Source: Macrostomum hystrix (lineage: Eukaryota > Animalia > Platyhelminthes). From it: a stretch of DNA of 64,000 nucleotides. The notes below the pieces were generated by a model that saw only the letters and a program-made list of their open reading frames with translations, did not search any database and was not told the origin of the DNA. Position 1 is the stretch's first letter. Each line of letters begins with the position of its first letter. Below, piece after piece: positions 31,908 to 55,211 of the stretch. A program made the translations under genes and the position numbers. The stretch lies in assembly GCA_950097015.1 (NCBI GenBank), contig CATNEN010000002.1, positions 3,720,001 through 3,784,000 of the forward strand, in the 5' to 3' direction.

Positions 31908-34900
31908 TTATTTCGCAGCGGCAACTCCAGCAGATGTCGCAGCTGGCGCAGATTTCAAAGCTCGCACAGGAATGTCGGCAAAACAGACGCCGGCGCCAGC
32001 CCGTTTTAAATTGATGCCGGCCACGGGCTCCCACCGATTGGCGACAGGATCGAAGCATTCAACAGTGTCCATGTAGGACTCGCCGTCGTGACCGCCGATG
32101 GCGTAGATCTTGCCCCAGAGAGCGGCTACGCCGACTCCGCCGCGGCAGGTGTTCATAGACTGCATTTGGCACCATTTGTCAGCCCGAGGATCGTATCGTT
32201 CAACAGTGTCTAGAGGAGCATTGTCGTCGAAGCCGCCCAGGACGTAGATAAAAGAGTCCAGAGCAACAGCGCCAGCGCCGGCCCTCTTAAACTCCATGGA
32301 GGCGGCTGGCTGCCACATGTTCTTCACCGGATCGTAGCGCTCGCAGGTGGCAATAGAAGTTAACGAATCGTTGCCGCCGAATACGAAGATTTTGTCTTGA
32401 AAAGCCGTGCCACCAAGGCCGCCGCGCGGACTACCCATTGAGGCCACGTTGGCCCAACTGTCCGTCACTGGATTATAGCGCTCCACGGTGTAGAAGCAGG
32501 CGATGTCGTCTAGGCCGCCGAGGCAGAATAGGCAGTCGCTGAGGGTGGCAACGGCTAGGCCGCGTCGCCTAGTCGCCATGCTGGCGATGCGGCTCCACCG
32601 ATTGGCTACGGGATTGAACACTTCGCCGGAGGCCAGGTGATCGTGACCGTCGTGACCGCCGACAGCGTAGACTAGACCTAGAATAGGGAGGTCGTGTTAT
32701 TCGTTTTTTTCTACTATGACTAGCATGAGACGAAATTCAGATGGAGTTTATTTTACGATATGCATCGAAAAACGTATATCCATCGACTATAATAATTAGA
32801 CAAGATAGAGAATATAAATAGGGATTCATTTGCGAGATTAATGAACTTGCTAATACTATCTAGCTCCCGACATGTATCGAAAAATATAGATTAAGTTAAC
32901 TCATCATCGTCTCGCAAACTAGGGTGGGAGGTTGTAGCTCTGTGGTCAAAAAGTTCGTACTCTTGACCACGAGGAGGTCAGAGGTTCGAATCTCAGCTTG
33001 GGAAACAATTTGTGGTCTTAAATCCTTGTTGTCTCGGGTGCTAGCATTAGCTCAGGTAAAAAAATAGTTTATGAACTAAAGATTTGTGCACTTAGTGTAC
33101 TACAATCATCCGATATGTATCGAAAAATCATTTTTTATAAACGCTGCCTCACCATTGGCGGACACCAGTCCAACATGTCGCCGCTTAGTATGCATCGGTT
33201 CAACTGTAATCCAACGCTCCTCTAACAGATCGTAGACCTCAGCATTGCGGTAAGGATCGCTTAGAGTACCCCGACCGCCAACGCAGAAAATGCTGCCTGC
33301 GTAGGTCTTCCTAGGCCGGTAGTGAGGCAGCGAGGACACGCGCTGAGTGACGGGCCGGTGCTTGGCCCGGCTGAGCTGATAGGCGCAGGCGTCTAATACC
33401 AAATCCTTGCAGGCCTGCTGGCTGTGAATCAGCGGATCCGAGTGCACAGTGTCCATCAGGTATTCGGACGGCAACTGGGCCAGACGGACGCAATGAAGAA
33501 GCCTGGGGCATTGTGGGAGAGCGGCACAATGAAACAATCCAATTGATCTTTCTAATGTACCAGTAAATACATCGCCCGGAATTTTAAATCTGAAGACTTG
33601 ATCCTGAATCCCTGAGCTCTGGAGATCTCAAATCTGAAGACCTGATCCTGAATCCCTGAGCTCTGGAGATCTCAAATCTGAAGACCTGATCCTGAATCCC
33701 TGAACTCTGGAGATCTCAAATCTGAAGACCGGATCCTGAATCCCTGAACTCTGGAGATCTCAAATCTGAAGACCCGATCCTGAATCCCTGAACTCTGGAG
33801 ATCTCAAATCTGAAGACCTGATCCTGAATCCCTGAACTCTGGAGATCTCAAATCTGAAGACCTGATCCTGAATCCCTGAACTCTGGAGATCTCAAATCTG
33901 AAGACCTGATCCTGAATCCCTGAACTCTGGAGATCTCAAATCTGAAGACCGGATCCTGAATCCCTGAACTCTGGAGATCTCAAATCTGAAGACCCGATCC
34001 TGAATCCCTGAACTCTGGAGATCTCAAATCTGAAGACCTGATCCTGAATCCCTGAACTCTGGAGATCTCAAATCTGAAGACCGGATCCTGAATCCCTGAA
34101 CTCTGGAGATCTCAAATCTGAAGACCCGATCCTGAATCCCTGAACTCTGGAGATCTCAAATCTGAAGACCTGATCCTGAATCCCTGAACTCTGGAGATCT
34201 CAAATCTGAAGACCCGATCCTGAATCCCTGAGCTCTGAAGATCTCAGATCTGAAGACCTGATCCTGAATCCCTGAGCTCTGGAGATCTCAAATCTGAAGA
34301 CCCGATCCTGAATCCCTGAGCTCTGAAGATCTCAAATCTGAAGACCTGATCCTGAATCCCTGAACTCTGGAGATCTCAAATCTGAAGACCTGATCCTGAA
34401 TCCCTGAACTCTGGAGATCTCAAATCTGAAGACCCGATCCTGAATCCCTGAGCTCTGAAGATCTCAGATCTGAAGACCTGATCCTGAATCCCTGAGCTCT
34501 GGAGATCTCAAATCTGAAGACCCGATCCTGAATCCCTGAGCTCTGAAGATCTCAGATCTGAAGACCTGATCCTGAATCCCTGAACTCTGGAGATCTCAAA
34601 TCTGAAGACCTGATCCTGAATCCCTGAACTCTGGAGATCTCAAATCTGAAGACCCGATCCTGAATCCCTGAACTCTGGAGATCTCAAATCTGAAGACCTG
34701 ATCCTGAATCCCTGAACTCTGGAGATCTCAAATCTGAAGACCTGATCCTGAATCCCTGAACTCTGGAGATCTCAAATCTGAAGACCTGATCCTGAATCCC
34801 TGAACTCTGAGGATCTCAAACCTTAAGATCCCATCCTTAATTCCTGAACGCTATCTGGAATCTGAAGATCCCATCCTGAGTCCCTGAGCTCTGAGGATCT

Positions 34901-36164
34901 CAAACCTTAAGATCCCATCCTTAATCCCAGAACTTACGAGCTAACTAGAGTTCGCCTAACCGGCAGGTCCGCGTGCACCCATTTCACAACGCTGTCGAAC
35001 ACCCGAACCTCGTCGGGCACATTCAACGAGTCCGACTTCAATATAGACTGCAGCATGTCGAATGATAGCGAGTGGAAAACTTCGCTATTGACCAGCTGCT
35101 GGTAGTTCTGGCAGAGGAACTTGTCAATCTCAGCTATGAGGCCCGTCCGGTTGTGCTGTTGTGCGAACAGTCGGGCATCGATCGCATTCGACACGTCCAG
35201 CTTGTGGGCTATGAACCTCTCGCAACAGTGAATTACCTCTTCTAGTTGGAGAAGACAGGCTGTGTGCATGAGGCATTGCACACTGGCCGGCGTGACTGAC
35301 AGTTGGCCGGTGTAAAAGAAATCGATCACCTTGACAACCATGTCTTGGTCAAGGTCGTGCAAGGTCACAGTGTCTGTCTTCGACTCCTAAAATGAAGCAA
35401 CAGTAGGAAAAAAATAAGCCAGATTGAATCTAGCTACTCTACCAGATTGAATCTAGCTACTCTACCAGATTGAATCAAGCTACTCTACCAGATTGAATCT
35501 AGCTACTCTACCAGATTGAATCAAGCTACTCTACCAGATTGAATCTAGCTACTCTACCAGATTGAATCTAGCTACTCTACCAGATTGAATCTAGCTACTC
35601 TACCAGATTGAATCTAGCTACTCTACCAGATTGAATCTAGCTACTCTACCAGATTGAATCTAGCTACTCTACCAGATTGAATCTAGCTACTCTACCAGAT
35701 TGAATCTAGCTACTCTACCAGATTGAATCAAGCTACACTACCAGATTGAATCTAGCTACTCTACCAGATTGAATCTAGCTACTCTACCAGATTGAATCTA
35801 GCTACTTTACCAGATTGAATCTAGCTACTCTACTAGATTTGATTTATGAATTAAAGAACCTTAGCTAGCCCAAAAGCAGGTATCCCAAGCCACACACCTG
35901 CATTGGAGAGGAGAACATTGCGCAAAAGTAGGGACTCCAGCAGGCGAGCACCACCCTATGACAGGGTATTTCCCGCTGACCAATCCTGATGCGCACATCG
36001 CATAGCACCTCGGTGCGGTAGAACTCGTGCAGGCATTTGAATCCAGAGTCGCCGTGCATTGCAAAAGTGCAAACTGCCTCAGACGAATCAGCATCATACT
36101 GGATGGCTAAATCTGACCGACTAGTAGCCAAGTGGTGGAGTCTTGGCAATGCCGTTGTTGTCAT
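31908..36164 (-). CDS. KLHL8: Kelch-like protein 8 (BTB-BACK-6 Kelch), ~611 aa
   Basis: Exons 36164-35898, 35386-34938, 33502-33153, 32677-31908 (1836 nt, in frame). BTB: LCDVRIRIGQREIPCHRVVLACWSPYFCAMFS. KLHL8-specific stretches: RPRKTYAGSIFCVGGRG..DP, RRHVG, VYAVGGHDG, RRGLA...GGLDD..CF, PRGG.G, RAGAG...GGFDDNAPL. Confidence 0.93.
32925..33005 (+). mobile_element. tRNA-like SINE head in KLHL8 intron 3
   Basis: GTTGTAGCTCTGTGGTCAAAA...GAGGTTCGAATCTC (A/B boxes) without a good cloverleaf. Confidence 0.5.
33590..34930. repeat. 44-nt minisatellite filling KLHL8 intron 2
   Basis: Unit TCTCAAATCTGAAGACCTGATCCTGAATCCCTGAACTCTGGAGA, period 44 (33661 to 33705), ~30 copies. Confidence 0.97.
35418..35835. 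repeat. 23-nt minisatellite filling KLHL8 intron 1
   Basis: Unit ACCAGATTGAATCTAGCTACTCT, ~18 copies. Confidence 0.97.
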
Positions 36165-41765: not shown

Positions 41766-44700
41766 TTAATGGTCAAAATGAACGGATTTGCGGGGAGGAA
41801 TCGGTGGCCCGGCGCCTTCTCTATTTGAAGCCATGGTGCGCCGGCTAGACCACCGCTCATAGATGGCTACACGCTCTTTGCTAGAGAAGTAGAAACACTC
41901 ATCTGACGACCTGTATATTCTTTCTTTCACCCAGCGAATTCGTTCCTCATCTTTGTTCTCCATGGCAGTTCGTCGATCAAGCGCGATCGCATTCATCTGC
42001 TGCAGGCAAAATTCATGATGTTCGCGGTCCCAGCTGTAGTGAGCCAGCGTGTGCAGCTCCTCCAAGTCCGGGTCCTCGTGCAGCTCTTTGAACCATTGTT
42101 CTGTAGCTTCTGCTAGATTTGCATTGCGGAGCCGCTCGGCCTGGAGACTCCAGCTCAGGCAGCGGAAGTTCACATACAGGTGAGAGGACCGAGGCTTCAA
42201 TAATCTTGGCGTAAACAGGCACTGCGTGAATTCAGGAAGAAATGGCAGCTGAGGCGGAGTGTCGCATGGCAGGCAGAACCTCCACGCCCAGTTCGAGTCT
42301 GTGTCCTCATATCTCTCGATCTCAGATATCTTCCAGCTTCTCTTTACTTGTGGAACCGGTCGATTCATTAGCATCGATAGAAGCCCATCAGCTTTGTCAA
42401 AGTCTCCAAATTTTATGTGAGCAATTGCCAGCAAACAGTCGGCCGCGTACGTGCACCATGGCAACTTTTTCAGCAAATTAAGCTTATCAAATAAGCTTTC
42501 TTTGTCGACCACTTTGGACTGTAGTTCAATGACACACACGTGAGTTATGATGGTGTACGCAGAGTAGTACTTCCTTGAATAGAATGAGTCCTGATCTAAG
42601 CTTAGATTAGTAGCAGAAAATGGTACCAGCGGCAGCATGCAGAATAGGTGAAAGTAAAAACCATGGGATGGCAGCGGTTTGAAATTTTCCATAGCTAGAT
42701 CAACTAGGTTTCTTGTATTAGTCCTCAAAAGCCGAATTCCGTCTCTAACTTTGGATTTTGTGAGCTTGTACTCATCACCGGCTCCAGCGTTCTTGAAGTA
42801 GAGCGGCGCATCGTCCATGAAAAAGTGCGGCATGCACTCATCGGGTGAGCGTCTTGAGTCCATAAAGTTAAGCATCATTCCGAGGGACTCCTTCAGCCTT
42901 TCGATCAGGTTCTGCGGCTGCCACGCTGCCTCAGCATCGCGCGAGTGCCTCTCTAGCATGAAGAAGAGCAGAGTCTTTGCGTGGTAGGTCTTGAGCCCTG
43001 GTGCGTCTAAATACCGTGGCAGGTAAATTTTGAAAACGAACTTGATCAGCGTAAACAGTTGACCCTGAACTGTACCCAGATTCATCATGATTTCTTTCTC
43101 GTGAAAGCTAAAACTCACTCTCAGTTCGTTAGGGAAATTTGGCCTTGTCGCTCTCACCAAATGAACTTTAATAGTACACCTCGGTAAAAGCTTCTTCACT
43201 CTGTCCTCACAGAGTCCACTGCAGCACTGGATGGCATGGCAGGTGTCCTGAGCAGGTAACAGTCCGCTGGCATCGGCGCGCACTGCAGGCTGGCTGCCTA
43301 AATTACCGTGGTTACAATGTTTTTGCTTTGATTAACGTCCACAATCTGTGTAACACAGTGAAGTTGGGGGTCGGTGGCAGAGTGGCCAACGCGTTTGCCT
43401 CTCACACCAAGGTGCCTGAGCTCGATTCCACGGCGAGGCCACATTCCTTTGGGGCGCAGCCGCGGAGAGAAGGCTTGGGGGCTTGTCGTGCAATTTACGC
43501 CATTGAGGGCCAACCTCCAAGGCACAGTGAAAGGTACACTGCCTGACGATGAGAAAGTCAGGGCAGATGTACACACCCAGTGTGCGTGTGTACTCAGGAG
43601 TCGGCGAAATGGGCAGATTTGTCTCCTCACTGGCTGCGGATATCGTGTTACCAAATGATGTGCGAATTACAGTGAAGTTATGAAAGGCCGATGAGAAATA
43701 TCTTAAATTTTGCACCTTCCCTTTCAGTTTGTTAAAGCATTTAACTCCGTATTTCTTGCCATAAGTATTTAGTACTTTACCTGCACTATGTACATGTACT
43801 AGTGCTAGCGTGTGCTTTGCGCCAACATGCCCGCGCACCGCTTACCTGATCCCACACTGAACTGCGCGTGGCCTTGTATCACCTTGAGCACGGAGTAATT
43901 GTCGCAGTCGCCAGACCGCCTGCAGCCACCCTCCAAATGAACTTTTGGCCCGTCGAGCAGGATAGTGAAGTCGATATCAGAGTCTGTTGAAACCCTTCCG
44001 TTCACTTGCTCCATATTGTTGGCCCAGCCCTCAGCGTAGCTGCCTGTTATACGACGTCCGTCCTGCAGGACGTCCTGCGCAGCCTGTTCAAGAATATTGG
44101 CCATTCGCTGCAGGCTTTGCGCTCGTGCTTTGGTGAATCCCGAGTTAAGCAGCACCTCGTACAGGTCCCTGCTGATCTGCCGGTCGAGTCTCAAAATCCC
44201 TCTAAATTTAAGTTGATTAATTTTAGGTTTTGTTATAGCCGAAATACTAGAAAAGAAATCTTAGTCAAGAATAGGCCACATGGTTTCTAGCTTACATGTC
44301 AGCAGGATAATCAGCGTTAGCGCTAGCAAAGCTTTCAGCGAATTGCGAGTAGCTGAAAAAGTTGCACGAGTTTCTTAAGTTCATTTTGATCGAATCCCGG
44401 ATATTAGAAAAGCAATGATTTTGCTTCGAACTGAGCATAGTCACCTGTCGACGTCGTGCTGCTGCTGACTCAGTTGTTGATGTTTCTCTAGCAGCTGCTT
44501 GCAGGTGAGTCCTCTCTTGTCTAAGTGGTCTTGATTCGCACCTCTGTTTTTCAGCGCCTCGGCTGTTCTGACGTGACCAGCTTCGGACGCTCTTGACAGT
44601 GCGGTCCGCCCTTCGAAGTCTGCTAGATGCACCGACGCGCCGGCGTTGATGAGCGGCTCAATGAGCTCGTGATGATCCGAATCAGCTGCCAGCATGAGAG

Positions 44701-47700
44701 CAGTGGCTCCTGTGCAGTCAGGCAAGTCGACATATGCCTGACTGCAGTCGATCAAGAAAAGTGCCAATGCGACATGACCGTGAGTTATGCAGAGGCAGAG
44801 CAGCTGAGTGATCTGAGCTGGCTGCATCTGAGATACTGTCGCAAGAAGGATGGATGTGTCTTTCGAAAGGACCAGATACGAGAGTAGGCTTAGAAGGGAG
44901 GAATTTCGAGAGAGCCAATGAGGTGGCACCACAGATTCGACTGAAGACGAATCAGCGTGTGCGGCTTCGTTCATATCAGTAAAGTAAAGTGGCTTCACCG
45001 CGGCCAGAAACGAACCAAGAGACGTTTTTTGCATCTTTCTCGCGCAGTTTACGGCTATGCCAAAGCAGAACTCGTCTCGACAGCGTTGATCACTAACTTT
45101 TCGAATGAAGAAAGTCACTTCCTCCCATTTCTTCTGTTGCGCTGCGGACGCTGCGATTCTCACGAGGCTTTGGTCGCTAAGGACGTTGTCAGCCTCAATA
45201 AAACTCTGCAATAGAGACCTCGACGTGGAAAAACGGCCATTCCTTGCAGATGCTTCAATCGCTCTAATGTAGCAAATCTCCTTAAGTTTAGCATGCGAAA
45301 TATTTTCAGCAAAAAAATTGGCGATCTCTGTCGAACCGGCCACCGAGGCAGACTCCGCAATTTTCATGCAGCAGTGGTCCTTCAGATTTCCTTCGTTGAT
45401 TAGAGGCAGCAGATATCTAGCGATTCGCCAGTTTTCAGCTTTGGCTGCAAAATCAATAGCCGTTATGCAGTAATAGTCCCGCTGCTCCAATTCCGACATT
45501 ATGCTGATTGCGTCCTTCAGAAACTCCCATTCTTTGGCCTGAACGGCTTGTTCGATGACCTTAATGCAACACTGTTCTCTGATATTCGATCTGCTAATGG
45601 TTTTGAGAAAAAATGTTAATTGCTCCAGTTGGCAATTTTCGACAGTGGACTCTGCGGCCTTCTTGCAGTACTCATCTCTACACTGATCGGAGAGACTATG
45701 TACGAAGAAGGCCAAGCAGTTCCAGTCGCCAAGTTTGATAGCATGATCCGCGGCTCTGGTGCAGGAGGCATTTTTTAGTTTGGGATCCGAAATCAATTGA
45801 ACCACGAATTTCAATACGTTCATGTTGCCAAGAACTATTGCACGATCCAACACTGCTAGGCAGCACTTGTCTCTTTGAGTTTGATTATCTATGGCAGGTA
45901 AGAAAAACCGGAGCAATTCAAAGTTAGAATTTCTTGCAGCGGATTCTGCACCCTTGATGCAGTATTGATTTCTGCTAGTTGCGTCGGTGTATTCCTGAAG
46001 AGCGTCACCTAAAGCTTCAAAGTTGTAGTCGTTTGCTGCAAGGTCGGCTGCACGTTCGCAGCACGCTTGTCGGATGCCATCTTGTGAAATCTGTTTTAGG
46101 AGTAGCATCGCTAATGTCCAATTCTTTTTTTGCATAGCATTTTCTAAAGCTTTCTGGCAGTATCGATCTTTCGCAAATTGATCCGATATCAGTTGTAGGA
46201 GATCTTTCAAGATGCCGAAGTGACCCTGAATTATTGCAGATTCTGCTGCTTTAACCAAGCAGTCATCTCTAAGTTTTGGGTCAGATACTGTGGTTTGTAA
46301 TAAGTGCATAAAGAAATCCATGTTCTTGATTGCGAGACTATTATCGGCAGCTTGAGCGCAGAACTCGTATTTTAATGTTGCGCAACGAATGGCCTTGGCG
46401 AACTCGAGCGTCCAGTACCAGTCGGCCTCCATTGCCGCAAGTTCTGCAGCCTTCTTATGCAGCTTGTCGCTGATATCTGCGTTGGATATTCTTAATATAC
46501 AACCGACTACCTCCCATCGCTTTTCGTTGGCTAAATAATTAACTGCTTCTGTACAGTAGCTGTTCTTTCTCTTCCTGTCGTTAACTTTTAGCAAAAAAAA
46601 TTCAAGTAATGGCAAATTGCTCGCCCCTCTAGCAGAATCTGCCGCGATTAACAGACACTTGTCCTTCAGATGAGGATCCGAGATATTTTGCACCAGAACA
46701 TCAACAACATCCAAATTTCGCTTAACAATCGTCGGCTTAAAAAATGATTCACAAAATGCGTCTCTGTAATGTTTGTCTGATATTTCCCGTAGAAAGATAT
46801 TCAGAAAATGTGCTTCGCCACATTGGACTGCATCGTTTGCCGCTGTCATGCAGCACTGACTCCGAAGTTTCCTATCGCCGATCTCCAGAATGAGTTGATG
46901 TGCAACATCCCAGCTCCTCTTCTCAACAGCCTTTCCCGCAGCCATGGTAAAGCACTGATCCTTCAGAGAGTCATTGTGGAAGAATCCCTCAAGTACCTTG
47001 ACAACTTCCCACTCTTGCTTCCCAGCTGCTGAATCTGCAACTGCCAGGCAGCACTGATCGATGAGACTTGGATCAACACAGTCTAAGAGAACTCTTACCA
47101 CCTCTTGATTTCCGCTGGCGGCTGCATAGTTCGCGCGAGTCATGCAGTACTCCTGCCTTCTGTTGGCATCGCGAACTTGTTGAATTAAGGATCTTAATAG
47201 ATTCAAATGGCCACCGTTCATAGCAGATTCAGCGGCCTCGAAACGGTAATCATCTCTTAACTTATCGTCCGAAATGTTTCGTAAAAGGAAATTTACGGTT
47301 TCCGAGTTGCCGTTTAATGCAGCCATCTCAGCAGCCCTGTGACAGAGATCTTCTCTCTCCTTCTTATCAAACACGTTTTTTAGCAAAATGGTCATCAGCT
47401 CAACATGGTCATCTCTCGCCGCCAAGGACTCAGCTGCTCTTACGCAAAGTTTTTGTCGCGAACTTAGGTCGGGGATGTTTTCGATGGAATTTCTAGCTAA
47501 GTCCAGCTGATTATTAATCACAGCGGAATCGGCAGCCTTCATGCACTGCTCGGTCTTTAGATGTGGGTCATCGATTGCTTCTAAAAGTTTCTCGACTCCT
47601 TTCCAACGCTTTCGTGAGATTTCAATGTCGATGAAGGTAGCAAGGCAGTTATTTCTTAGCTTTTTTTCCTCAACTTTCTTTGAAAACGATATCGCCGCTT

Positions 47701-48169
47701 CATACTCACCCAATAAGAAAGCAGATTCAGCTGCCTTCTCGTAGCAGCGATCTCTCTTTCGCTGGTGAGGAAACATTGGTACTATCACCTCGACAATGGC
47801 CCACTGCTTATTGGACATTGCTGTGTCAACAATTCTTGAGCAGCATTCATCTCTGCAATTCGGCTCCGTGATTTTATTTATAAGAAACAAGTTAATGTCG
47901 AGGCGGCCCTCTTTCGCTGCTGTTTCAGCTGCCTCGAGACAGCACTGATTTCTGAGTGTCTCATCCTCAATGCCATTCACTAGAAAGTGAGCGACCTCCA
48001 CATGACCCTGCGATGTGGCGAGCTTAACAGTGTCTTTGCACACCTGATCTCTGACTGGCTGGGGCAGCGACTCCACAAGTCTTCTCATGTGACTCACCTC
48101 GTTGTTGATTGCGTGATACCTGATCCGTCTGATCGTCCTAAGGCTCTCCTTTGAAATTGAGTTGCCCAT
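41766..48169 (-). CDS. Paralog A: myristoylation motif + ankyrin-like repeat array + cGAS/Mab-21-like nucleotidyltransferase (cGLR) fusion, ~1870 aa
   Basis: Exons 48169-44445, 44201-43846, 43297-41766 (5613 nt; phase 2 AG|GTGACT...TTTAG|A, phase 1 G|GTAAGC...TTTAG|GC). MGNSISK start; ~31 33-aa repeats; canonical ANK TGATALMLAA/GRTALSRA; NTase TGSYAEG...DSDIDF...QDTCHAIQC; Mab-21 C-lobe HLV...LRVSFSFHEK...IK...GLKTYHAKTLLF...CMPHFF. Confidence 0.88.
43372..43665 (+). mobile_element. SINE family 1, full-length copy in intron 2 of cGLR paralog A
   Basis: GGTGGCAGAGTGGCCAACGCG...GAGCTCGATTCC head, family body, hairpin and CCAAATGATGTGC tail. Paralog B intron 2 (104 nt) has no such insert. Confidence 0.88.
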
Positions 48170-49039
48170 CGCAAAAATCTACTTGACGATAGAACCTGCG
48201 GCGGGAACCGCAGATTTCTTAATCGGAAGACTGTGTACTTTTGCGTTTTAACTACGAGCGACGTGAAAAAATTGTCTTTGAAAACTATTAGGAATCGTGC
48301 AGGGCTATGCAATGCATTTATATTATCACATAATCAAGGATGCGGGTGCGTAGAATATAATATATTTTAGTAATAATTGGCATTGCTAGTTAGTTTCTAG
48401 AGAGAGAGAGAGAGAGTACAGTTAAGAATAGTGGAAGATAGAGAACAGAAAATAGCAAAATAAAATGCTTTTTTCATCTACTTTGCATAATAGAACGCTG
48501 GTTAAATTTAAAAATAACTTTTTTAACAATCGTAGACGTCACTTGGTGCTCGAATTAAGGTTGGGAATGTTTGCGATGAAATTTCTAGCTTATTAAAACT
48601 TTTGAATGGCGTCCCTTGGCCTTGCTATCTCCTAATTTTTTAACTTGCATTACTTTCTTGTTTGCATGCATGTTGCACCTTTTGCAGTCGACTAAACGAA
48701 TACATAAAAGTTATAAATAAAACTAGAGACCGTTAATATATTAAAAACAAATTTAGTGAGTATATTTTTTACTTGGCTAGATTGTTATTATGTTTCATTA
48801 AATAATATGATTAATAATAATAATAAATAATAACCAACGGCTCCTAACTACACTTTTCGACCAATTATTGACTTCACTAAAATAATATCAAGATCTACGT
48901 AAAAAAATATTCGTTAATTATTGCAGGACTAAAATGTATTGCCTGGTAGTTACAAATTTTGAAAAAAAACAAAGGGAGGAGAGAAACGAAGCGCGAACAG
49001 AATTGCAAGAAAGAGAATAAAAAACAACTGTGGCACATA

Positions 49040-49275
49040 GGATTACATCTTGAGTCTCGCACTGCAAGGTCGCTAAAGCTTGATTCCGAGGCCTGGCCCC
49101 ATTAATTTCGCGGACTCAGCCGCGAATAGAAGGCTCTCGTTGTGAAGAGGGGGGCAATTGTTGTACAATTTAGCAACTAAGGGCCCACACCGAGGCACAG
49201 TGAGAGTATGTAGACTGTTTGACAGTGAAAAATCCTGGGCTGATGTACACCAGAGCTGTGTGAGTGTGTGTTCAA
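49040..49275 (+). mobile_element. SINE family 1, degenerate copy between the two cGLR genes
   Basis: GATTCCGAGG...CAGCCGCG...TTGTACAATTTA...GAGGCACAGTGA...GGGCTGATGTACACC...TGTGTGAGTGTGTG is colinear with the family. Confidence 0.55.
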
Positions 49276-49687
49276 CGAACCTTTTAAATACGTCAGTGCC
49301 GAAACTCGGCGTAGAGTTGGTGGCAGGAATTCGCATTGTGTGAGACACGCTATAGAACATCTTATAGGCTGCGTTCTTTCATGTCGCATACTTTTTTGAG
49401 GCTATTTAGTAGCCAGCACAGAGCAATGAAAAGGGCACGGCTATTCATTGTAGGTATTAATATGTTCGCGTATGAGAAGCTTCAAAATTTTCAAAAAACT
49501 TGCTCATTTTTTCTGCTATGCAGCAGCTCACCGCGCTAAAGAACAATAACCTACTGCATGATGATGCACGCTTGTGTTGCTTAAAAAAGAAATCGACACG
49601 AGCAGAGAAAACTGTGATAGAACAAACGTTTGATGTGAAATCAAGTCTTTTTTTAAGTATACTCTTCTCTGTCCTCGAAAACTGCCA

Positions 49688-52600
49688 ATGGGAAATACGC
49701 TGTCAACTCAAACAGTCAATCAGTTGGCGGAAGCTGTTGGTTCCGGAAATCTGCGGCGAGTGAGGTGGCTTATCGCTAAAGCCAGACTGAATGATCAGAG
49801 CCTCATATCATTGGCGGAGATTGCTGCACGTGAGGGTCACAGAGACATCCTGATTTTTCTGTTGCGAAGAATTTTAAACCAACATCTTAAAGATTGTTTT
49901 TGCCTGTGGGCATCGGTTAAAGAGCTGCGTGTAAATCGCCTGGACATTGGACTGTGCCTTATACAAGCAATAGCAAACCAAAAGACCAGAGACCTGTGTT
50001 GTGCTCAGCTAATTGAGCAAGCTTCACAGCTCGGTCACTGGTCTTTTGTAACTTTTCTCGTACAGTTGCTCACCAATCGAACCCTGAAAGACCAATGTTG
50101 CGCGAGAGCTTGCAAAGTGGCGGCAGTTGCTGGTGAAGAGGAAATAGTGAAACTTCTTGTTGAAGCAATCTCTGACGTGGGCCAAAAGGATCGGTGCTGC
50201 TCGTTCACTGTGGAATCTGCTGCTAGCCAAGGTCGCAAGGAAATCTGCGAATTTCTCGTGCGAAATATGTCCGAAGAGGGAATGATTGACGAGGCCTGCT
50301 TTCTGGCAGCCAAGCACGCAGCCCGCCACAGCCACATGGAGTGTCTCTCCTTCCTTGTGCTTGAATCAGTTGGTGAGGACAGCAGAGACCAGTGCTGCAT
50401 GATGGCCTTGAACTATGCTGCTATTTACGGCCAATTGAAGGCCATCGAATTTCTGACATTGAACATCAGCGACCAGCGAGTAAAGGACAAAGCTTGCAAG
50501 ACGGCCATCGAGTTCGCATCGGCCTACAACCATCCGAAAATAGTGATTTTTCTTCTGTCGAGTCTAAGCGACAATGAATCCAGCAGCAAGGACTATATCT
50601 GCTCAAAAGCGGCCGAGCTGTCTGCGAGGAGAGGTCACTTCACCGCCACTAAGATTTTTGTTAAACGAGTCGCGAATGAAGCTCTGAGGCAAGAGTGCTG
50701 CAGATTGTGCGCCGAAATTGCAGGCAATCAGAACTCAGAAGAAAGAAAATATCTTCTTAGCATTATCGCTAGCGACCAGAGCCACAATGCGATAATCGAA
50801 AAGAATCTAATGGACCTTTGGACTATGGAGCAAAGAGTGCGCCAAGAAAATCTTGGCGATTCGGGCTGGCTTGATGTCGCCAAATTCGCTGCAAAGAATC
50901 GCCTGTTCGACCAAGTAGCGTCAATGATAAATAACATAGAAAATCAGCAAATCAAAGATAGCTGCTGCTTGGAAGTTGTGTCGGACGCTGCTAGCTGCTA
51001 CAGTTGGTCCACGGTTGAGTTTCTCGTGAACTCGACAGCAGACAAGGCAAAGAAGTGCGAGTGCAGCATGGCTGCTATAGAATGCGCAGCTAGAAGTGGC
51101 AATATTGATCTAGTGAAACGTCTCGCCCAAGAAGACGCAGATAAAAGTTTAACCCTGCAAGGCCTCGGAAAGGCTGTTGTTCCCGCTGCGATCCATGGTC
51201 ACCTGGCAGTTTTACAGTTTCTTATCGACACAATTTCAGATAAAAAACTAAAAGAGGATTGCTGCGTCGACGCAGCGGAGGCTTCTGCCACATGGGGTCG
51301 CCTAAATATCGCCCAATTTCTGGTGGATAAAATTTCTAGCGAAAAGCTAAGAAATGAATGCTGCAAGAATGCGGCCAAAACAGCAGAAATACATGACCAC
51401 TTTGAAGTCGAATTATTATTTCTTGATGCCATCACAGGAAGTAGCGGAATGAAGGATCAGTGTTGTGAAGAGCATGCTAAATCTGCTGCTGCTGAATGTA
51501 ATTTTGAAAGTGCCTCGCGCTTAATTCAGCTTATTGATGACCAGGATCTGAAAGATAAGCTGTGTATGGATTTCGCTGAACAAACTCTGCGAAATGGGAA
51601 ATGGGAGATGGCGACTACTTTCATGGAATGTACAAGTAGTCCAATGCAAAGGGATTATATGTGCTCTCGGATCGCTGAGTTGGCTGTACCAAAGTTGAGT
51701 TGCAAATCATTAGCTTGCATTGCAGAAGGCATCACAGATGCAAGCCTGAGAGATCAGTTTTTGATGCACGCAGCGCAGGCCGCGATGGAAAAAGCCGGCA
51801 AGGCGTTGTTTTGCGAACTATTAGCGACAACTGAACGCCAGTCCAAGGCAGTGGATACACGCAAATCACACGTGCAATCTGGCTTCGTAGCTATCCCTCA
51901 TCATTGGCTCGCCCGGAGCTCTCGGGTGCGTGGTTTAATATCGAATCTCACAATTGCTGGCGAAAATTCGATTCTGCATTGCACTCTGCTTCAGATGGAG
52001 CCAGCCAACATCACCCAGCTTCTTCGGCTCTCCATCACTGAAGGCCATGTTGCATTGGCGTTCGAACTGATTAAACATGAGAAATTCAGCCAAGAAGTGG
52101 TTGATCTGCCTGATAGCACTGGAGCAACCGCTCTCATGCTTGCTGCGGGCGATGGTCATTACGGTCTTATCCTTCAACTGTTGAAGAAGGCTGCTTCCGT
52201 GCACGCAGAAGACAATGCGGGTAGAACTGCACTTTCACGAGCGTGCGAAAACGGTCACCTGAAAGCTGCTAAAGTTCTCGTTGATCGAGGAGCTGATCCA
52301 TTTCATCAAGATGCTCGTGGAATGACGTGCCAACAAATAGCTTCCGGACACACCGACCTAGCTAGTGTACTTCGAGTCGTCGATACCCAAAGCGTCGGGT
52401 AAGTTGCATGATTTACTTAGATAATATTTCATTACAATCTTTTTACGATGCCTGCACCAACTTTAACTTGAACATCGATGTTTAAAGCTTGTCTTCTCAT
52501 ACATTCATGTGTACACGACGAGTAAATGCAGCATCGCTTGTTTTGTTTTAGCAACGATAAATTACTCAGTGAGAACCTGCATCAGGTGCTGAACGCTGCT

Positions 52601-54462
52601 GGCTTTACTCAGGAGAGAGCAGCGTGTCAGCAAATCCTGGCCGACTGGCTCGAAGGCGTTGCTAGAGTTTTAAATCACAATGGCCAGTTGACTGGAAGTT
52701 TCGCGGACGGATGGGCTAACAGTCTGACGCAAGTGAACGGCAGGACAGCGGCAGACTCTGACATTGACTGGACTGTCCTGGATGCCCAGCAGGTCTTCCA
52801 TCTGGAGGGCGGTTGTGAAAAGTCAAAAGAAGAGTGCCTGCGAAAGTATGTGAAGCAATGTAAGGTTGTTAAGGGCCATGCTCTTGTCGACTCAGAATCA
52901 GGTGCGTCACAGGATGATAGTCTAGAACTCGGATTATAGTAATTTGTCTTCCCATTTTGATAATTTTGAAGCTTTTTAAAATTAGATTCAGGCAACCGAT
53001 TTCAGGTAGTCAGCCGGCCATTTCAACAGCAGCCAATGGGGTGCGGCCTGCGCACGACCTGTGCCACGCTATTGAATGCTGCAGCAGCTTTTGTGAGGCC
53101 AGGGTAAGGATATTACTAAGTGCGCCTGATGAGTCACCTGTCCATTTGGTATTCGCAACTAGACCGCAGCCGAACGCAACAAGCGAGCTGAGAGTGAGCT
53201 TCAGTTTCCAAGAAAAGCGAATTATCCGACGTCTAAGCACTGTGCAGGGCCAGCTTTTTGCGATCATCAAATTCATTTTCAAGAGGTATCTGCCTAAAGC
53301 TTTGGAAACATCTGGGCTAAAGACCTATCACGCAAAAACTCTGGTGTTCTTCATGCTGGAGAAGTACGGATTGGACAACACTGCCGTTTGGCAAGGTGTG
53401 AATTTGCTTTCCCTGCTTAAGGAATCTCTCGACATGATGCTGGATTTCTTTAACAAGGAACCGCAATCACCAGACGTTTGCATGCCGCACTTCTTCATTC
53501 CCAAGGCTCCGCTTTATTTCAAGAACGCCGGACTCAGTGGCGACTTTAATAAAACTAAAACGAGAGTTAGAAACCGACTCTGTGAGGTTAGAAATGACGT
53601 CACCAGGGTGGTAGAGCAACTGAAAAAGCAGGTGCAGCCCCTGCAATCGTACAGCTTCTACTTTCATCTATACTGCCTGCTTCCACTGGCTGTACCGCAA
53701 ACTTGCATTCAATTTGATGAACTGGCTTCAAAAGATACTCAGAACTTTGAGACACTGGCAAGCGTGTACAGCATTGTGGTTCGGTGCCTCACTGAGCTGC
53801 AGTCCACTTGGAACAACAGGCAGGCCGTCATGAGGCTGCTCAGTCACTTGCATGGTCTAGCTTTCTGCAAATGTGCCATCAAGAGCCTGACGGCAATGGC
53901 ACATTTAAAGTTTGATGAGAACGAACAGGCTAAAGCACTACTATCGGAGCTCCGGGAGCATCCTGTGAAACGAAGCTGGAAGACTGAAGACCTGAAAAAA
54001 ATTCGACGGCCTGGAAGAGATTACATAGACTGGGAAAAAATCCCAATGGATGTCGACTGGGCGTGGAGATTTTGCGTCCCTTGTAACGCGGAACCGAAAT
54101 TTGCGTTTCTTCCCGAGTTCACGCAGAGTCTGTTCACGGCCAGGCTGTCACAGCCTCGCTCCTCCCACCTGTTCATCAGCTTCCGCTGCCTGTCCTGGAG
54201 CCTCCAAGCTGAGCTGCTCCCGGATCACGTCAGGCCAACAGCGCCTTCAACATGGTTCACGGAGCTGCACGAGGACCCAGACTTGGAGGAGCTGCTCACT
54301 CTAGCTCACTACAGCAATAGCGTTGAGCATCTTCAGTTCTGTCTGCAGCAGATTGGGCTCATAAGAGACGAGAAGCGCATGGTCCTGGAGCAGGAGGATG
54401 AGAAGAAGATTCAGTTGGTCAGGATGAAGCTGAAGAGAATCGAGGAGGAAACTGAAATGTAA
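49688..54462 (+). CDS. Paralog B: myristoylation motif + ankyrin-like repeat array + cGAS/Mab-21-like nucleotidyltransferase (cGLR) fusion, ~1505 aa
   Basis: Exons 49688-52398, 52552-52901, 53006-54462 (4518 nt; phase 2 GG|GTAAGT...TTTTAG|C, phase 1 G|GTGCGT...TTCAG|GT). MGNTLST start; ~21 repeats; TGSFADG...DSDIDW...HDLCHAIEC; LRVSFSFQEK; GLKTYHAKTLVF; CMPHFF. Intron positions and phases are the same as in paralog A. Confidence 0.88.
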
Positions 54463-55211
54463 CTCTTTTAATGCGCCAGTATTAGTCTGAATGTGGAAAG
54501 TACTTTTAAATTTCAAGTCTATCGCTCATACTTGCACTCGAAGCTTTCATAATTCTCAAAAAATTCAATTGATTTTACAATTTAATGTTACTTACATCCA
54601 TATAGTTCTTTGGACGAATAGTATAAAAGTAAAATTTAAGTACTCCTGGTACAATGTCAGTCTGATTTCGTTACTTGACTCTTCGTTTGATTTCGATTCC
54701 TACGTGTACATTATAAGTAACTTTTTTAGTGTTTTCTAACTTTCTGAATCACCGAATCACCGTTAAAAATCTGACATTTTAAATTGTAACTGTAATTTCA
54801 TAATCATTAATGATGTAAAAGCCACTTAGGGGATTTAATAATATTTTAGGATAGTTCCCTGCTTTCCCTTCGTCCCTTCCGTTCCCTTCCCTTCCCTTAC
54901 CTCCCTCCATCTGCCATTATTTATGCATCGTCTAACTCTCAAGCGCTGCCATCCCTCCTACCTTTTCCATTGCGCAAATAATAGTCATAAGTAATTCGTC
55001 TTTTTAGATTGCACACCCACCTCCCTCCTTTCTTTGTTTTCCTTGTCATAAAGCATTGTTACGTAATTGCGCACCCACCCTCCTCCTATAAGTAATTTCA
55101 TATCCCTTTTCCCAGTCCCGCGTCCAGCACTGCGGGGCTTTGCCCATCCCCCAGGTAGCTGCCCTAATTTTGCTATTAACTTTCTGCTCGTTGAACAATT
55201 TAAGATTCGAG

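What the first reader, a model, noticed from the sequence alone, without database searches (positions are those of the whole stretch)
41766..54462. Head-to-head pair of giant ankyrin-array / cGAS-like receptor (cGLR) fusion genes: a candidate NLR-like immune sensor system
Seen in sequence: two paralogs diverge from a 1.5-kb spacer. Each encodes MGxxxS, a long repeat array, three canonical ankyrin repeats and a nucleotidyltransferase with Mab-21 C-lobe motifs. Established: cGAS/cGLR enzymes use GS and D/E-x-D...D motifs to make cyclic dinucleotides that signal through STING, and some invertebrate cGLRs carry accessory ANK/TPR domains. Inference: a ~700-1050-aa variable solenoid gating a second-messenger synthase is a sensor-enzyme design like an NLR. 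It may recognise proteins or membranes rather than nucleic acid. I know of no description of this in flatworms, but cannot search to confirm.
Basis: partly seen in the sequence, partly recalled or inferred. Interest (0 to 1): 0.92.

Follow-up and report, generated by a model that had tools for sequence, protein, structure and literature searches.

The report
Paired flatworm ankyrin-cGAS-like receptor genes
Two neighbouring flatworm genes each join a very long ankyrin-type repeat array to a cGAS-like signalling enzyme with its catalytic residues in place; the genes are real and one is shown to be expressed, but this fusion family in Macrostomum flatworms is already in a published 2023 catalogue and its trigger, product and receptor remain unknown.

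Summary
Two paralogous three-exon genes diverge from a 1,518-bp spacer. Gene A (- strand, 48169..41766) encodes 1,870 aa and gene B (+ strand, 49688..54462) encodes 1,505 aa. Each encodes an MGxxxS start, a 33-aa-period ankyrin-variant array (about 32 and 22 units), three canonical ankyrin repeats, a cGAS-like nucleotidyltransferase, and a helical C-terminal domain of about 300 aa. RNA contigs from four runs cover gene B without mismatch and remove both introns exactly as modelled. A model of a 55%-identical Macrostomum lignano paralogue matches human cGAS at Z 15.9. The GS, DxD and third-Asp residues are intact in both genes and in 71 of 79 family clusters.

These genes belong to the cGLR family by sequence, fold and active site. 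They are not NLRs. The claim that the architecture is undescribed in flatworms fails. Li et al. 2023 list M. lignano ankyrin-cGLR fusions in Table S2. They also screened five M. lignano proteins, two of this subfamily, and none is among the 15 active enzymes they labelled.

Other agents of this scan reached the same verdict on other loci of this genome. I file this as a new member of a known, uncharacterised kind. The unusual features are the array length, the hairpin-less Cys-Cys repeat and the myristoylation motif.

The parts
44445..48169 (-). Gene A exon 1 (aa 1-1241 plus 2 nt): MGNSIS start, about 32 variant ankyrin units (aa ~7-1095), a linker, and three canonical ANK repeats (aa 1124-1214 = 44528-44800)
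   Evidence: ORF and translation; Pfam Ank families; 33-aa period; GT donor at 44444-44443
44202..44444 (-). Gene A intron 1 (GT..AG, phase 2). A second in-phase acceptor would start exon 2 at 44246 and add 15 codons
   Evidence: Sequence reading and single open frame after joining; no reads were laid on gene A
43846..44201 (-). Gene A exon 2: cGAS spine helix and NTase core with G1295-S1296 (44044-44039), D1317 (43978-43976) and D1319 (43972-43970)
43298..43845 (-). Gene A intron 2 (GT..AG, phase 1); it splits the active site between the DxD motif and the third Asp
   Evidence: The junction sequence matches the continuous M. lignano protein P0001
41766..43297 (-). Gene A exon 3: third catalytic Asp D1378 (43247-43245), the RVSFS and YHAKT nucleotide-pocket motifs, Mab-21_C lobe (42807-43001), a helical C-terminal domain (41769-42743), and the stop
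48170..49687 (.). 1,518-bp AT-rich spacer between the two start codons; it includes gene B's 5' UTR (from about 49508-49522) with a short uORF at 49558-49584
   Evidence: no repeats found in it
49688..52398 (+). Gene B exon 1 coding part (aa 1-903 plus 2 nt): MGNTLS start, about 22 variant ankyrin units (aa 1-722 = 49688-51853), a disordered linker, and three canonical ANK repeats (aa 785-875 = 52040-52312)
   Evidence: AlphaFold model at pLDDT 85; Foldseek best matches are the ankyrin-1/ankyrin-B solenoids; covered by RNA contigs
52399..52551 (+). Gene B intron 1 (153 nt, GT..AG, phase 2)
   Evidence: Removed in RNA contigs of all four runs
52552..52901 (+). Gene B exon 2: spine helix and NTase core with G952-S953 (52694-52699), D974 (52760-52762) and D976 (52766-52768)
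52902..53005 (+). Gene B intron 2 (104 nt, GT..AG, phase 1)
   Evidence: Removed in RNA contigs of all four runs
53006..54462 (+). Gene B exon 3 coding part: third catalytic Asp D1038 (53056-53058), RVSFS and YHAKT motifs, Mab-21_C lobe (53290-53514), a helical C-terminal domain (53590-54459), and the stop. The transcript runs on to about 54552

Best explanation
Shown: these are two divergently transcribed paralogues of the ankyrin-cGLR gene family, which is greatly expanded in Macrostomum flatworms. Each protein has four parts: (1) an N-terminal MGxxxS motif; (2) a long all-helical solenoid of 33-aa ankyrin-derived units, about 32 in A and 22 in B, followed by three canonical ankyrin repeats; (3) a complete cGAS-like bilobed nucleotidyltransferase with GS, DxD and third-Asp residues and the RxSxS / YHxK pocket motifs; (4) a helical, TPR-like C-terminal domain of about 300 aa. 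Gene B is transcribed and spliced as modelled.

Inferred: the enzyme is catalytically competent and makes a nucleotide second messenger, most likely a cyclic di- or oligonucleotide. Like other cGLRs it probably rests inactive until a ligand is recognised. The fast-diverging repeat array is the likeliest recognition or autoinhibition module, probably for a protein or other non-nucleic-acid ligand. The N-terminal glycine is probably myristoylated, which would place the sensor on a membrane. The signal would be read by a STING-type receptor. Earlier notes of this scan report TIR-STING genes in this genome, but I did not test that.
For: Gene models: single frames of 1,870 and 1,505 aa after joining through GT-AG introns of the same phases. 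One 4,774-nt RNA contig lies on 49522..52397 | 52551..52897 | 53002..54552 with 0 mismatches, and the same joints appear in four runs.

Family: the only close relatives are more than 20 M. lignano proteins at 57% identity or less, with the same Ank + Mab-21_C make-up. An exhaustive profile search gives 89 clusters at E < 1e-30; the six I looked up (length 1,355 aa and over) are all M. lignano or unnamed, and the weaker hits include bivalve cGLR-like proteins.

Enzyme: Mab-21_C is above Pfam's cut-off in gene A and 0.1 bit under it in gene B. A PDB profile search hits only cGAS, cGLR1 and MAB21L1. Foldseek's top 50 are all cGAS or MAB21L1. VIA-align gives Z 15.9 to human cGAS 6ct9, with model residues 35-346 on cGAS 161-521, and Z 15.3 to MB21D2.

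Active site: the third Asp of 'PAQDTCHAI' aligns with the Asp of the bivalve 'GPA...DhVxAF' strand. GS/DxD/D is intact in both window genes and in 71 of 79 clusters. R, S, Y and K of the RxSxS and YHxK motifs are conserved in 85-87 of about 90 sequences.

Array: 33-aa period. The AlphaFold model at pLDDT 85 shows about 22 helix pairs of 17 + 9-10 residues without hairpins. Its best PDB matches are the ankyrin-1 and ankyrin-B 24-repeat solenoids and NOMPC. A versus B identity is 29% in the array against 55-57% in the ANK3 and NTase parts.

Background: cGLRs with ANK or TPR modules exist, and most cGLRs are inactive until a ligand binds (Li et al. 2023).
Against: No activity is known for any family member. 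Five M. lignano constructs, two of this subfamily, were in the screen of Li et al. with dsDNA and poly I:C, and none carries the label given to the 15 active enzymes. Those constructs lacked the array, and a blank label is not proof of inactivity.

Pfam's Mab-21 NTase model PF03281 does not hit.

The structure was modelled on a 55%-identical paralogue, not on the window's own spliced protein. Model quality is moderate (pLDDT 73), and the loops around the active site fall below 50.

Eight of 79 family clusters have lost a catalytic residue, so catalysis is not indispensable for every member.

Nothing here shows an immune role: there are no expression data after infection. The STING partner rests on unchecked first-stage notes. 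Published surveys say flatworms lost cGAS and STING (Wu et al. 2014; planarians).

Transcription of gene A was not tested. Myristoylation is inferred from a motif alone.
Confidence: 0.6

Rival explanations
1. Catalytically silent Mab21-type scaffold. Like MAB21L1 or MiD49/MiD51, the NTase fold may only bind a nucleotide or serve as an adaptor. The protein would then be a membrane-anchored ankyrin scaffold with no second-messenger output.
For: No family member is among the active enzymes labelled in the published screen. PF03281 does not match. Eight of 79 clusters have lost a catalytic residue. MAB21L1 is among the fold and sequence matches. Giant ankyrin solenoids such as ankyrin-1 are classic membrane scaffolds.
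Against: GS, both DxD aspartates and the third Asp are kept in 71 of 79 clusters that are otherwise as little as 35-55% identical, and in both window genes. Li et al. separate Mab21L1/2/3 from cGLRs precisely because those proteins lack a functional active site. The pocket motifs RxSxS and YHxK are also kept.
Confidence: 0.15
2. Nucleic-acid-sensing cGLR of the ordinary kind. The NTase domain itself would bind dsRNA or dsDNA as in cGAS or Drosophila cGLR1, and the ankyrin array would serve only localisation or oligomerisation.
For: The NTase core is moderately basic, with pI 8.7 (A) and 8.3 (B), while the rest of the protein is acidic. Most deorphanised cGLRs respond to dsDNA or dsRNA (Li et al. 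2023).
Against: The vertebrate zinc-thumb segment is an insertion absent from the family; there is a gap opposite mouse cGAS 'GIEKTCCESSGAKCCRKE'. NTase-only constructs of two subfamily members, tested with ISD45 dsDNA and poly I:C, are not among the labelled actives. The array, at 50-58% of the protein, is the fastest-diverging part. That pattern suits a recognition surface better than a tether.
Confidence: 0.15
3. An active NTase family expanded for a non-immune purpose, for example reproduction, stem-cell or regeneration control, or intragenomic conflict, rather than pathogen sensing.
For: The neighbours are housekeeping-type genes such as a KLHL-type BTB-Kelch gene. Gene B is expressed at modest depth in four apparently unchallenged samples. 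Large lineage-specific expansions also occur in reproductive gene families (general knowledge).
Against: Every characterised cGLR with an intact active site acts in innate immunity (Li et al. 2023). Large, rapidly diverging repeat-receptor families are typical of immune recognition. This is an argument by analogy only.
Confidence: 0.1

Closest known systems
Macrostomum lignano ankyrin-cGLR proteins catalogued by Li et al. 2023 (e.g. PAA93208.1, PAA68676.1; here P0001, P0010-P0022)
   Same: They share the domain order (variant ankyrin array, three canonical ANK, cGAS-like NTase, helical C-terminal domain). They share the signature motifs TGSYAEGWAN, DSDIDW, PAQDTCHAI, LRVSFSFxEK, GLKTYHAKT and CMPHFF. 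NTase identity is 50-57%.
   Different: The window genes come from another genome; their best identity to any M. lignano protein is 57%, and RNA of 'organism A' matches at 100%. Their arrays are longer than in most M. lignano gene models. Both begin with MGxxxS, which among the M. lignano models looked at fits P0039, P0075 and P0110; many of those models are N-terminally truncated.
Vertebrate cGAS (e.g. PDB 6ct9, 4k9b)
   Same: They share the bilobed Mab21 fold over the whole catalytic domain (Z 15.9). They share the GS loop, DxD, third Asp, and the 'RLSFS' and 'YHVKT' pocket motifs.
   Different: Identity is only 12-16%. There is no zinc thumb and no basic disordered N-terminus. The segment between DxD and the third Asp is shorter, at 59-62 residues. 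A giant N-terminal ankyrin array and a 300-aa C-terminal helical domain are added. The ligand and product are unknown.
ANK- or TPR-fused cGLRs of corals and molluscs (Stylophora pistillata, bivalves; Li et al. 2023)
   Same: In both, the cGLR core is fused to a repeat-type protein-interaction module. Bivalve cGLR-like proteins are the nearest non-flatworm sequence relatives. A molluscan Mab-21 cluster is the best Atlas fold match across residues 29-589.
   Different: The flatworm arrays are far longer. They use a modified repeat in which a 17-residue first helix replaces the hairpin and TPLH is replaced by a Cys-Cys motif. Sequence similarity outside the NTase core is nil.
Ankyrin-1 / ankyrin-B membrane-binding domain and the NOMPC ankyrin spring
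   Same: Both are very long (24-29 repeat) 33-residue-period ankyrin solenoids. These are the best structural matches to the array (E 2e-13).
   Different: The canonical repeats have beta-hairpin fingers and the TPLH motif, and the window's array units lack both. The known proteins are scaffolds or springs and are not fused to an enzyme.
NLR / STAND immune receptors
   Same: Only the logic is shared: a variable repeat solenoid attached to a signalling module, in a large lineage-specific family.
   Different: There is no NACHT/NB-ARC ATPase and no CARD, PYD or TIR effector in these genes. They are not members.

Membership tests
cGLR (cGAS-like receptor, Mab21 superfamily) | Mab-21 C-terminal lobe recognisable by sequence (Pfam PF20266) | tested here: met
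   Scores are 27.2 bits (A) and 24.0 bits (B) against a cut-off of 24.1, so A passes and B falls 0.1 bit short. M. lignano paralogues score 24-29 bits. A family profile hits cGAS, cGLR1 and MAB21L1 only, at E about 1e-4.
cGLR (cGAS-like receptor, Mab21 superfamily) | Mab-21 NTase lobe recognisable by Pfam PF03281 | tested here: not met
   There is no PF03281 hit at E <= 0.1 for the window exons or at E <= 1 for full-length M. lignano paralogues. The lobe is identified by fold and motifs instead.
cGLR (cGAS-like receptor, Mab21 superfamily) | Bilobed cGAS fold (spine helix, NTase core, helical C-lobe) | tested here: met
   This was tested on a model of the 55%-identical paralogue P0001:520-1135 (pLDDT 73, pTM 0.76), not on the window protein itself. 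Foldseek's top 50 are all cGAS or MAB21L1. VIA-align gives Z 15.9 over cGAS 161-521.
cGLR (cGAS-like receptor, Mab21 superfamily) | Active site G-S ... [DE]h[DE]h ... X50-90 ... h[DE]h (the criterion of Li et al. 2023) | tested here: met
   Gene A has G1295 S1296, D1317-I-D1319-F and D1378. Gene B has G952 S953, D974-I-D976-W and D1038. The spacing from the second DxD Asp to the third Asp is 59 (A) and 62 (B) residues. The residues flanking the third Asp are polar (Q-D-T, H-D-L) rather than hydrophobic.
cGLR (cGAS-like receptor, Mab21 superfamily) | Synthesis of a nucleotide second messenger on ligand recognition | not testable with these tools
   Five M. lignano relatives were in the published screen, and none is labelled active.
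cGLR (cGAS-like receptor, Mab21 superfamily) | A STING-type receptor in the same organism | not tested
   Only unchecked first-stage notes report TIR-STING genes about 5.3 Mb away on the same piece. Published surveys report loss of STING in the flatworms examined.
Ankyrin repeat proteins | 33-residue repeat of two antiparallel helices stacking into a solenoid | tested here: met
   The period is 33. Pfam Ank_2/Ank_4 hits fall inside the arrays. The model is a continuous helix-pair solenoid whose best matches are long ankyrin domains.
Ankyrin repeat proteins | TPLH motif and beta-hairpin finger loop | tested here: not met
   This holds for the array units. Their consensus is sD..lRDqCC..AAEsAA..GnwEil.FLL..I, and DSSP shows no strands and a 17-residue first helix. 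The feature is met only by the last three repeats (Pfam Ank).
NLR / STAND receptors | Central NACHT or NB-ARC NTPase domain | tested here: not met
   No such Pfam family hits any exon at E <= 0.1.
N-myristoylated proteins | N-terminal M-G-x-x-x-[ST] with a permissive residue at position 3 | tested here: met
   The N-termini are MGNSISK and MGNTLST, and M. lignano P0039 begins MGNQNS. The lipid modification itself is not testable here.

The most novel reading that the evidence does not exclude
The hairpin-less, Cys-Cys ankyrin-variant solenoids would form a diversified ligand-recognition repertoire of roughly a hundred genes. Each would gate a membrane-tethered cGAS-like synthase whose nucleotide signal is read by TIR-STING-type receptors. 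That would amount to a full cGLR-STING immune system with non-nucleic-acid, NLR/LRR-like recognition, in a flatworm lineage, although the phylum is textbook-listed as having lost cGAS and STING.
Probability: 0.25. Interest if true: 0.75.

Novelty: new member of a known kind. Interest (0 to 1): 0.45.

Why it matters
Flatworms are usually cited as animals that lost cGAS-STING signalling. Macrostomum is the exception, and it holds one of the largest cGLR expansions known, almost all fused to ankyrin arrays. None has a known ligand, product or receptor. These two genes are clean, full-length examples, and gene B is shown to be expressed. Their complete active sites and extreme arrays make them good candidates for deorphanising a cGLR that probably senses something other than nucleic acid, in an animal where RNAi and transgenesis are available. 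The family itself is already catalogued, so the value lies in the well-defined constructs and the specific hypotheses, not in a new kind of system.

Tried and rejected
1. I first suspected that the third catalytic Asp was missing, because 'LRVSFSF' looked like the cGAS 'ISVDITLAL' strand. I rejected this. The PDB profile alignment shows that LRVSFSFxEK corresponds to cGAS 'WRLSFSHxEK', which lies downstream of the third Asp. The true third Asp is in 'PAQDTCHAI'.

2. By eye the repeat looked like a 37-aa unit. Autocorrelation shows exactly 33 aa.

3. A strict regular expression undercounted the third Asp in divergent subfamilies. I replaced it with an HMM-column census.

A 55%-identical M. lignano paralogue was folded instead.

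5. The last protein search, on the neighbouring Kelch exon to place the organism, gave no taxonomic signal.

6. The C-terminal 335 aa gave only weak TPR / Integrator-like leads in the Atlas (scores at or below 0.88) and weak TPR fold matches. I treat these as leads only.

7. The spacer holds no direct or inverted repeats.

8. No further copy or pseudogene of the family lies in the window.

9. Paper searches for Macrostomum with cGAS or STING, TIR-STING with Platyhelminthes, and cGAS-like receptor with flatworm found nothing beyond Li et al. 2023 and statements of loss.


Full report
**Observation.** The region 41766-54462 holds six long ORFs, three on each strand, that point away from a central spacer. 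Reading the DNA at the ORF ends shows that each stop codon lies just inside a GT donor. AG acceptors restore the frame.

Joining the pieces gives two genes, each with a single stop codon at the end of the frame:
- Gene A (- strand): exons 48169..44445, 44201..43846 and 43297..41766, encoding 1,870 aa.
- Gene B (+ strand): exons 49688..52398, 52552..52901 and 53006..54462, encoding 1,505 aa.

The intron phases are the same in both genes, 2 then 1. The junction peptide of exon 2 to exon 3 ('...GHAQFSVGSG|SQPAVRA...') matches the uninterrupted Macrostomum lignano protein P0001 ('...GHAQVAVGAGNQPAVRA...'). The start codons are 1,518 bp apart.

**Transcription.** Four public runs from one study and one organism hold 81-92% of the sampled words of gene B. 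When laid on 48900-54800, one 4,774-nt contig of run X1 covers 49522..52397, 52551..52897 and 53002..54552 with no mismatch. The same two GT..AG joints occur in all four runs. After the stated cut offsets they fall at 52398/52552 and 52901/53006, exactly as modelled.

So gene B is an expressed three-exon mRNA with about 170 nt of 5' UTR and about 90 nt of 3' UTR. Gene A's support is its intact 5.6-kb frame and its conserved splice sites. Gene A exon 2 also has a second in-phase acceptor 45 nt upstream, which I could not resolve.

**Domain content.** Pfam finds ankyrin families in exon 1 of both genes. The strongest stretch covers three canonical repeats at the end of exon 1. Pfam also finds Mab-21_C (PF20266) in exon 3 of both genes, at 27.2 and 24.0 bits against a cut-off of 24.1. 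It finds no NACHT or other signalling domain.

The long N-terminal arrays have a sharp 33-residue periodicity. A repeat HMM built from them finds 28 units in A and about 18 in B. From the array lengths (1,095 and about 722 aa) and the model, I estimate about 32 and 22 units.

The unit consensus is sD..lRDqCC..AAEsAA..GnwEil.FLL..I. It keeps the ankyrin 'AA..G(H/N)...(V/L)..LL' core but replaces TPLH and the hairpin with a helical segment that carries a Cys-Cys pair. Units are old: the best intragenic identity is 52%, with no sign of recent homogenisation.

An AlphaFold model of gene B exon 1 has mean pLDDT 85. It shows about 22 consecutive pairs of a 17-residue and a 9-10-residue helix with no strands. 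A disordered linker follows (723-737), then the canonical ankyrin repeats. Foldseek's best matches are the 24-repeat ankyrin-1 and ankyrin-B solenoids, DARPin fusions and the NOMPC spring (E 2e-13).

**The enzyme.** A profile of the family's C-terminal 600 aa (alignment A1) hits only cGAS, cGLR1 (8gjy) and MAB21L1 in the PDB. In that alignment 'LRVSFSFxEK ... GLKTYHAKT ... CMPHF' lies on mouse cGAS 'WRLSFSHTEK ... CSYHVKT ... YFIPKF'. The cGAS zinc-thumb segment has no counterpart.

I could not fold the window's own spliced protein because it has no reference. I therefore folded the 55%-identical M. lignano paralogue P0001:520-1135 with A1 (pLDDT 73, pTM 0.76). Foldseek's 50 best PDB matches are all cGAS or MAB21L1. 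VIA-align superposes model residues 35-346 on human cGAS 161-521 at Z 15.9, and on human MB21D2 at Z 15.3. The fold is therefore a complete cGAS-type catalytic domain.

**Active site.** The GS loop (TGSYAEGW / TGSFADGW) and the DxD motif (DSDIDF / DSDIDW) lie in exon 2. The third carboxylate lies in exon 3, in 'PAQDTCHAI' (A) and 'PAHDLCHAI' (B). It aligns with the Asp of the 'GPA...D-h-V-x-A-F' strand of bivalve cGLR-like proteins and with 'DLIPAF', 'DIVYSY' and 'DIIVAL' in the other M. lignano cGLRs printed in Li et al.'s Table S3.

The spacing from the second DxD Asp to the third Asp is 59 residues in A and 62 in B (positions). That is within the X50-90 of the published cGLR motif.

In an HMM-column census of the family, 71 of 79 clusters that cover all five positions keep G, S, D, D and D, and both window genes do. 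The R and S of RxSxS and the Y and K of YHxK are kept in 85-87 of about 90 sequences. From my own knowledge of human cGAS, these correspond to the nucleotide-contacting R376/S378 and Y436. Conservation of the catalytic set across paralogues that share only 35-55% identity argues for retained catalysis.

The NTase core is mildly basic (pI 8.3-8.7), while the whole proteins are acidic (pI about 6.5).

**C-terminal domain.** About 300 aa follow the Mab-21 C-lobe. They are conserved within the family (motifs DWAWRFC, FLPEFTQ, HLYVNFRCLSWSLQAE, DPDLEEL) and are mostly helical. They give only weak TPR-like leads. The function of this domain is unknown.

**Family and distribution.** Word-based searches with exon 1 and exon 3 find only M. 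lignano proteins, at 57% identity or less, plus one metagenome fragment. The exhaustive profile search finds 609 proteins at E <= 1e-3 and 89 clusters at E < 1e-30. The six I looked up, of 1,355-3,379 aa, carry M. lignano records or, for one, no name. The weaker hits include bivalve proteins.

The window's organism is therefore a close relative of M. lignano, or a genome absent from the protein collection, that carries the same expanded family. Notes of this scan list the same fusion at many other loci of this genome. Four follow-up agents reached the same verdict independently. I had reached the catalogue evidence below before reading those notes.

**Divergence between the two paralogues.** Identity is 29% in the array, 57% in the linker plus ANK3 region, 55% in the NTase and Mab-21_C region, and 46% in the C-terminal domain. 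The array is the fastest-evolving part and also differs by about ten units. This fits a recognition surface, but it is not a test of selection.

**What is already known.** Li et al. 2023 (bioRxiv 10.1101/2023.02.22.529553 / PMC9980059) make several relevant statements:
- 87% of cGLRs are stand-alone enzymes, and some carry TPR or ankyrin modules.
- Their Table S2 lists Ank_2 domains on M. lignano accessions (PAA67649.1, PAA58690.1, PAA68676.1, PAA86972.1, PAA45980.1).
- Their Table S3 lists five M. lignano proteins, samples 89-93, among the 140 screened. Samples 92 and 93 carry the same motifs as the window genes.
- The 'Note' column that names the 15 active enzymes is empty for these five.
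- The screen used NTase constructs with poly I:C and ISD45 dsDNA, and the authors stress that many cGLRs appear inactive for want of the right ligand.

Other papers state that flatworms lost cGAS and STING, based on Schistosoma and on planarians. I found no paper that discusses the Macrostomum family in its text.

**Mechanism.**
Shown:
- the gene structure;
- expression of gene B;
- the cGAS fold on a paralogue;
- the intact catalytic and pocket residues;
- the ankyrin-type solenoid.

Inferred:
- The enzyme is active and makes a nucleotide second messenger.
- The array recognises a ligand or autoinhibits the enzyme.
- Gly2 is myristoylated. MGNSISK and MGNTLST fit the consensus, and M. lignano P0039 starts MGNQNS.
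- A STING-type receptor reads the signal. TIR-STING genes are reported by unchecked first-stage notes about 5.3 Mb away.

The rivals are a silent Mab21-type scaffold, an ordinary nucleic-acid sensor, and a non-immune role. They are weighed in their own sections of this report.

**Verdict.** The identification as an ankyrin-cGLR fusion is correct. The NLR comparison is an analogy only, and the novelty claim fails because the family is catalogued. What is new is modest:
- two full-length members in a head-to-head pair, one of them shown to be expressed;
- arrays among the longest in the family;
- a description of the modified repeat;
- the myristoylation motif;
- an active site split by an intron.

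I rate it a new member of a known but functionally orphan kind, of moderate interest.

Noticed in passing
window 49558-49584: There is a short upstream ORF (ATG ATG ATG ... TAA, 8 codons) inside gene B's 5' UTR, within the transcript seen in the RNA contigs.
   Followed up: no
window 54271-54315 and 52729-52776: Short RNA contigs of much higher depth (225-303 and 19-25) lie here with 2 mismatches and unlike flanks. They probably come from more strongly expressed paralogues that share the DPDLEEL and DSDIDW motifs.
   Followed up: no
window 44202-44246: Gene A exon 2 has a second AG acceptor in the right phase 45 nt upstream, so the exon could start at 44246. That would add 15 codons. Which one is used is unresolved.
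   Followed up: partly
window 31908-35368 (- strand): A BTB-BACK-Kelch (KLHL-type) gene lies in several exons about 6 kb beyond gene A's 3' end. It has no evident link to the cGLR pair.
   Followed up: partly
M. lignano proteins P0038, P0039, P0041, P0061, P0065, P0088, P0094, P0103: Eight of 79 family clusters have lost a catalytic residue (for example D to N at the second Asp, or D to S, T, P, H or R at the third). These are possible pseudoenzyme or decoy members.
   Followed up: partly
window 48399-48416: A (GA)9 microsatellite sits in the AT-rich spacer between the two genes.
   Followed up: no
P0023 (JGI metagenome contig of 3,238 nt): A 467-aa fragment, 45% identical to the window's exon 3, comes from an environmental metagenome. 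It is presumably a macrostomid-like flatworm in the sample.
   Followed up: no
same genome, about 5.26 Mb beyond the window's end: First-stage notes report a doubled TIR-STING gene and a tandem paralogue. If real, these would be candidate receptors for the family's product.
   Followed up: no
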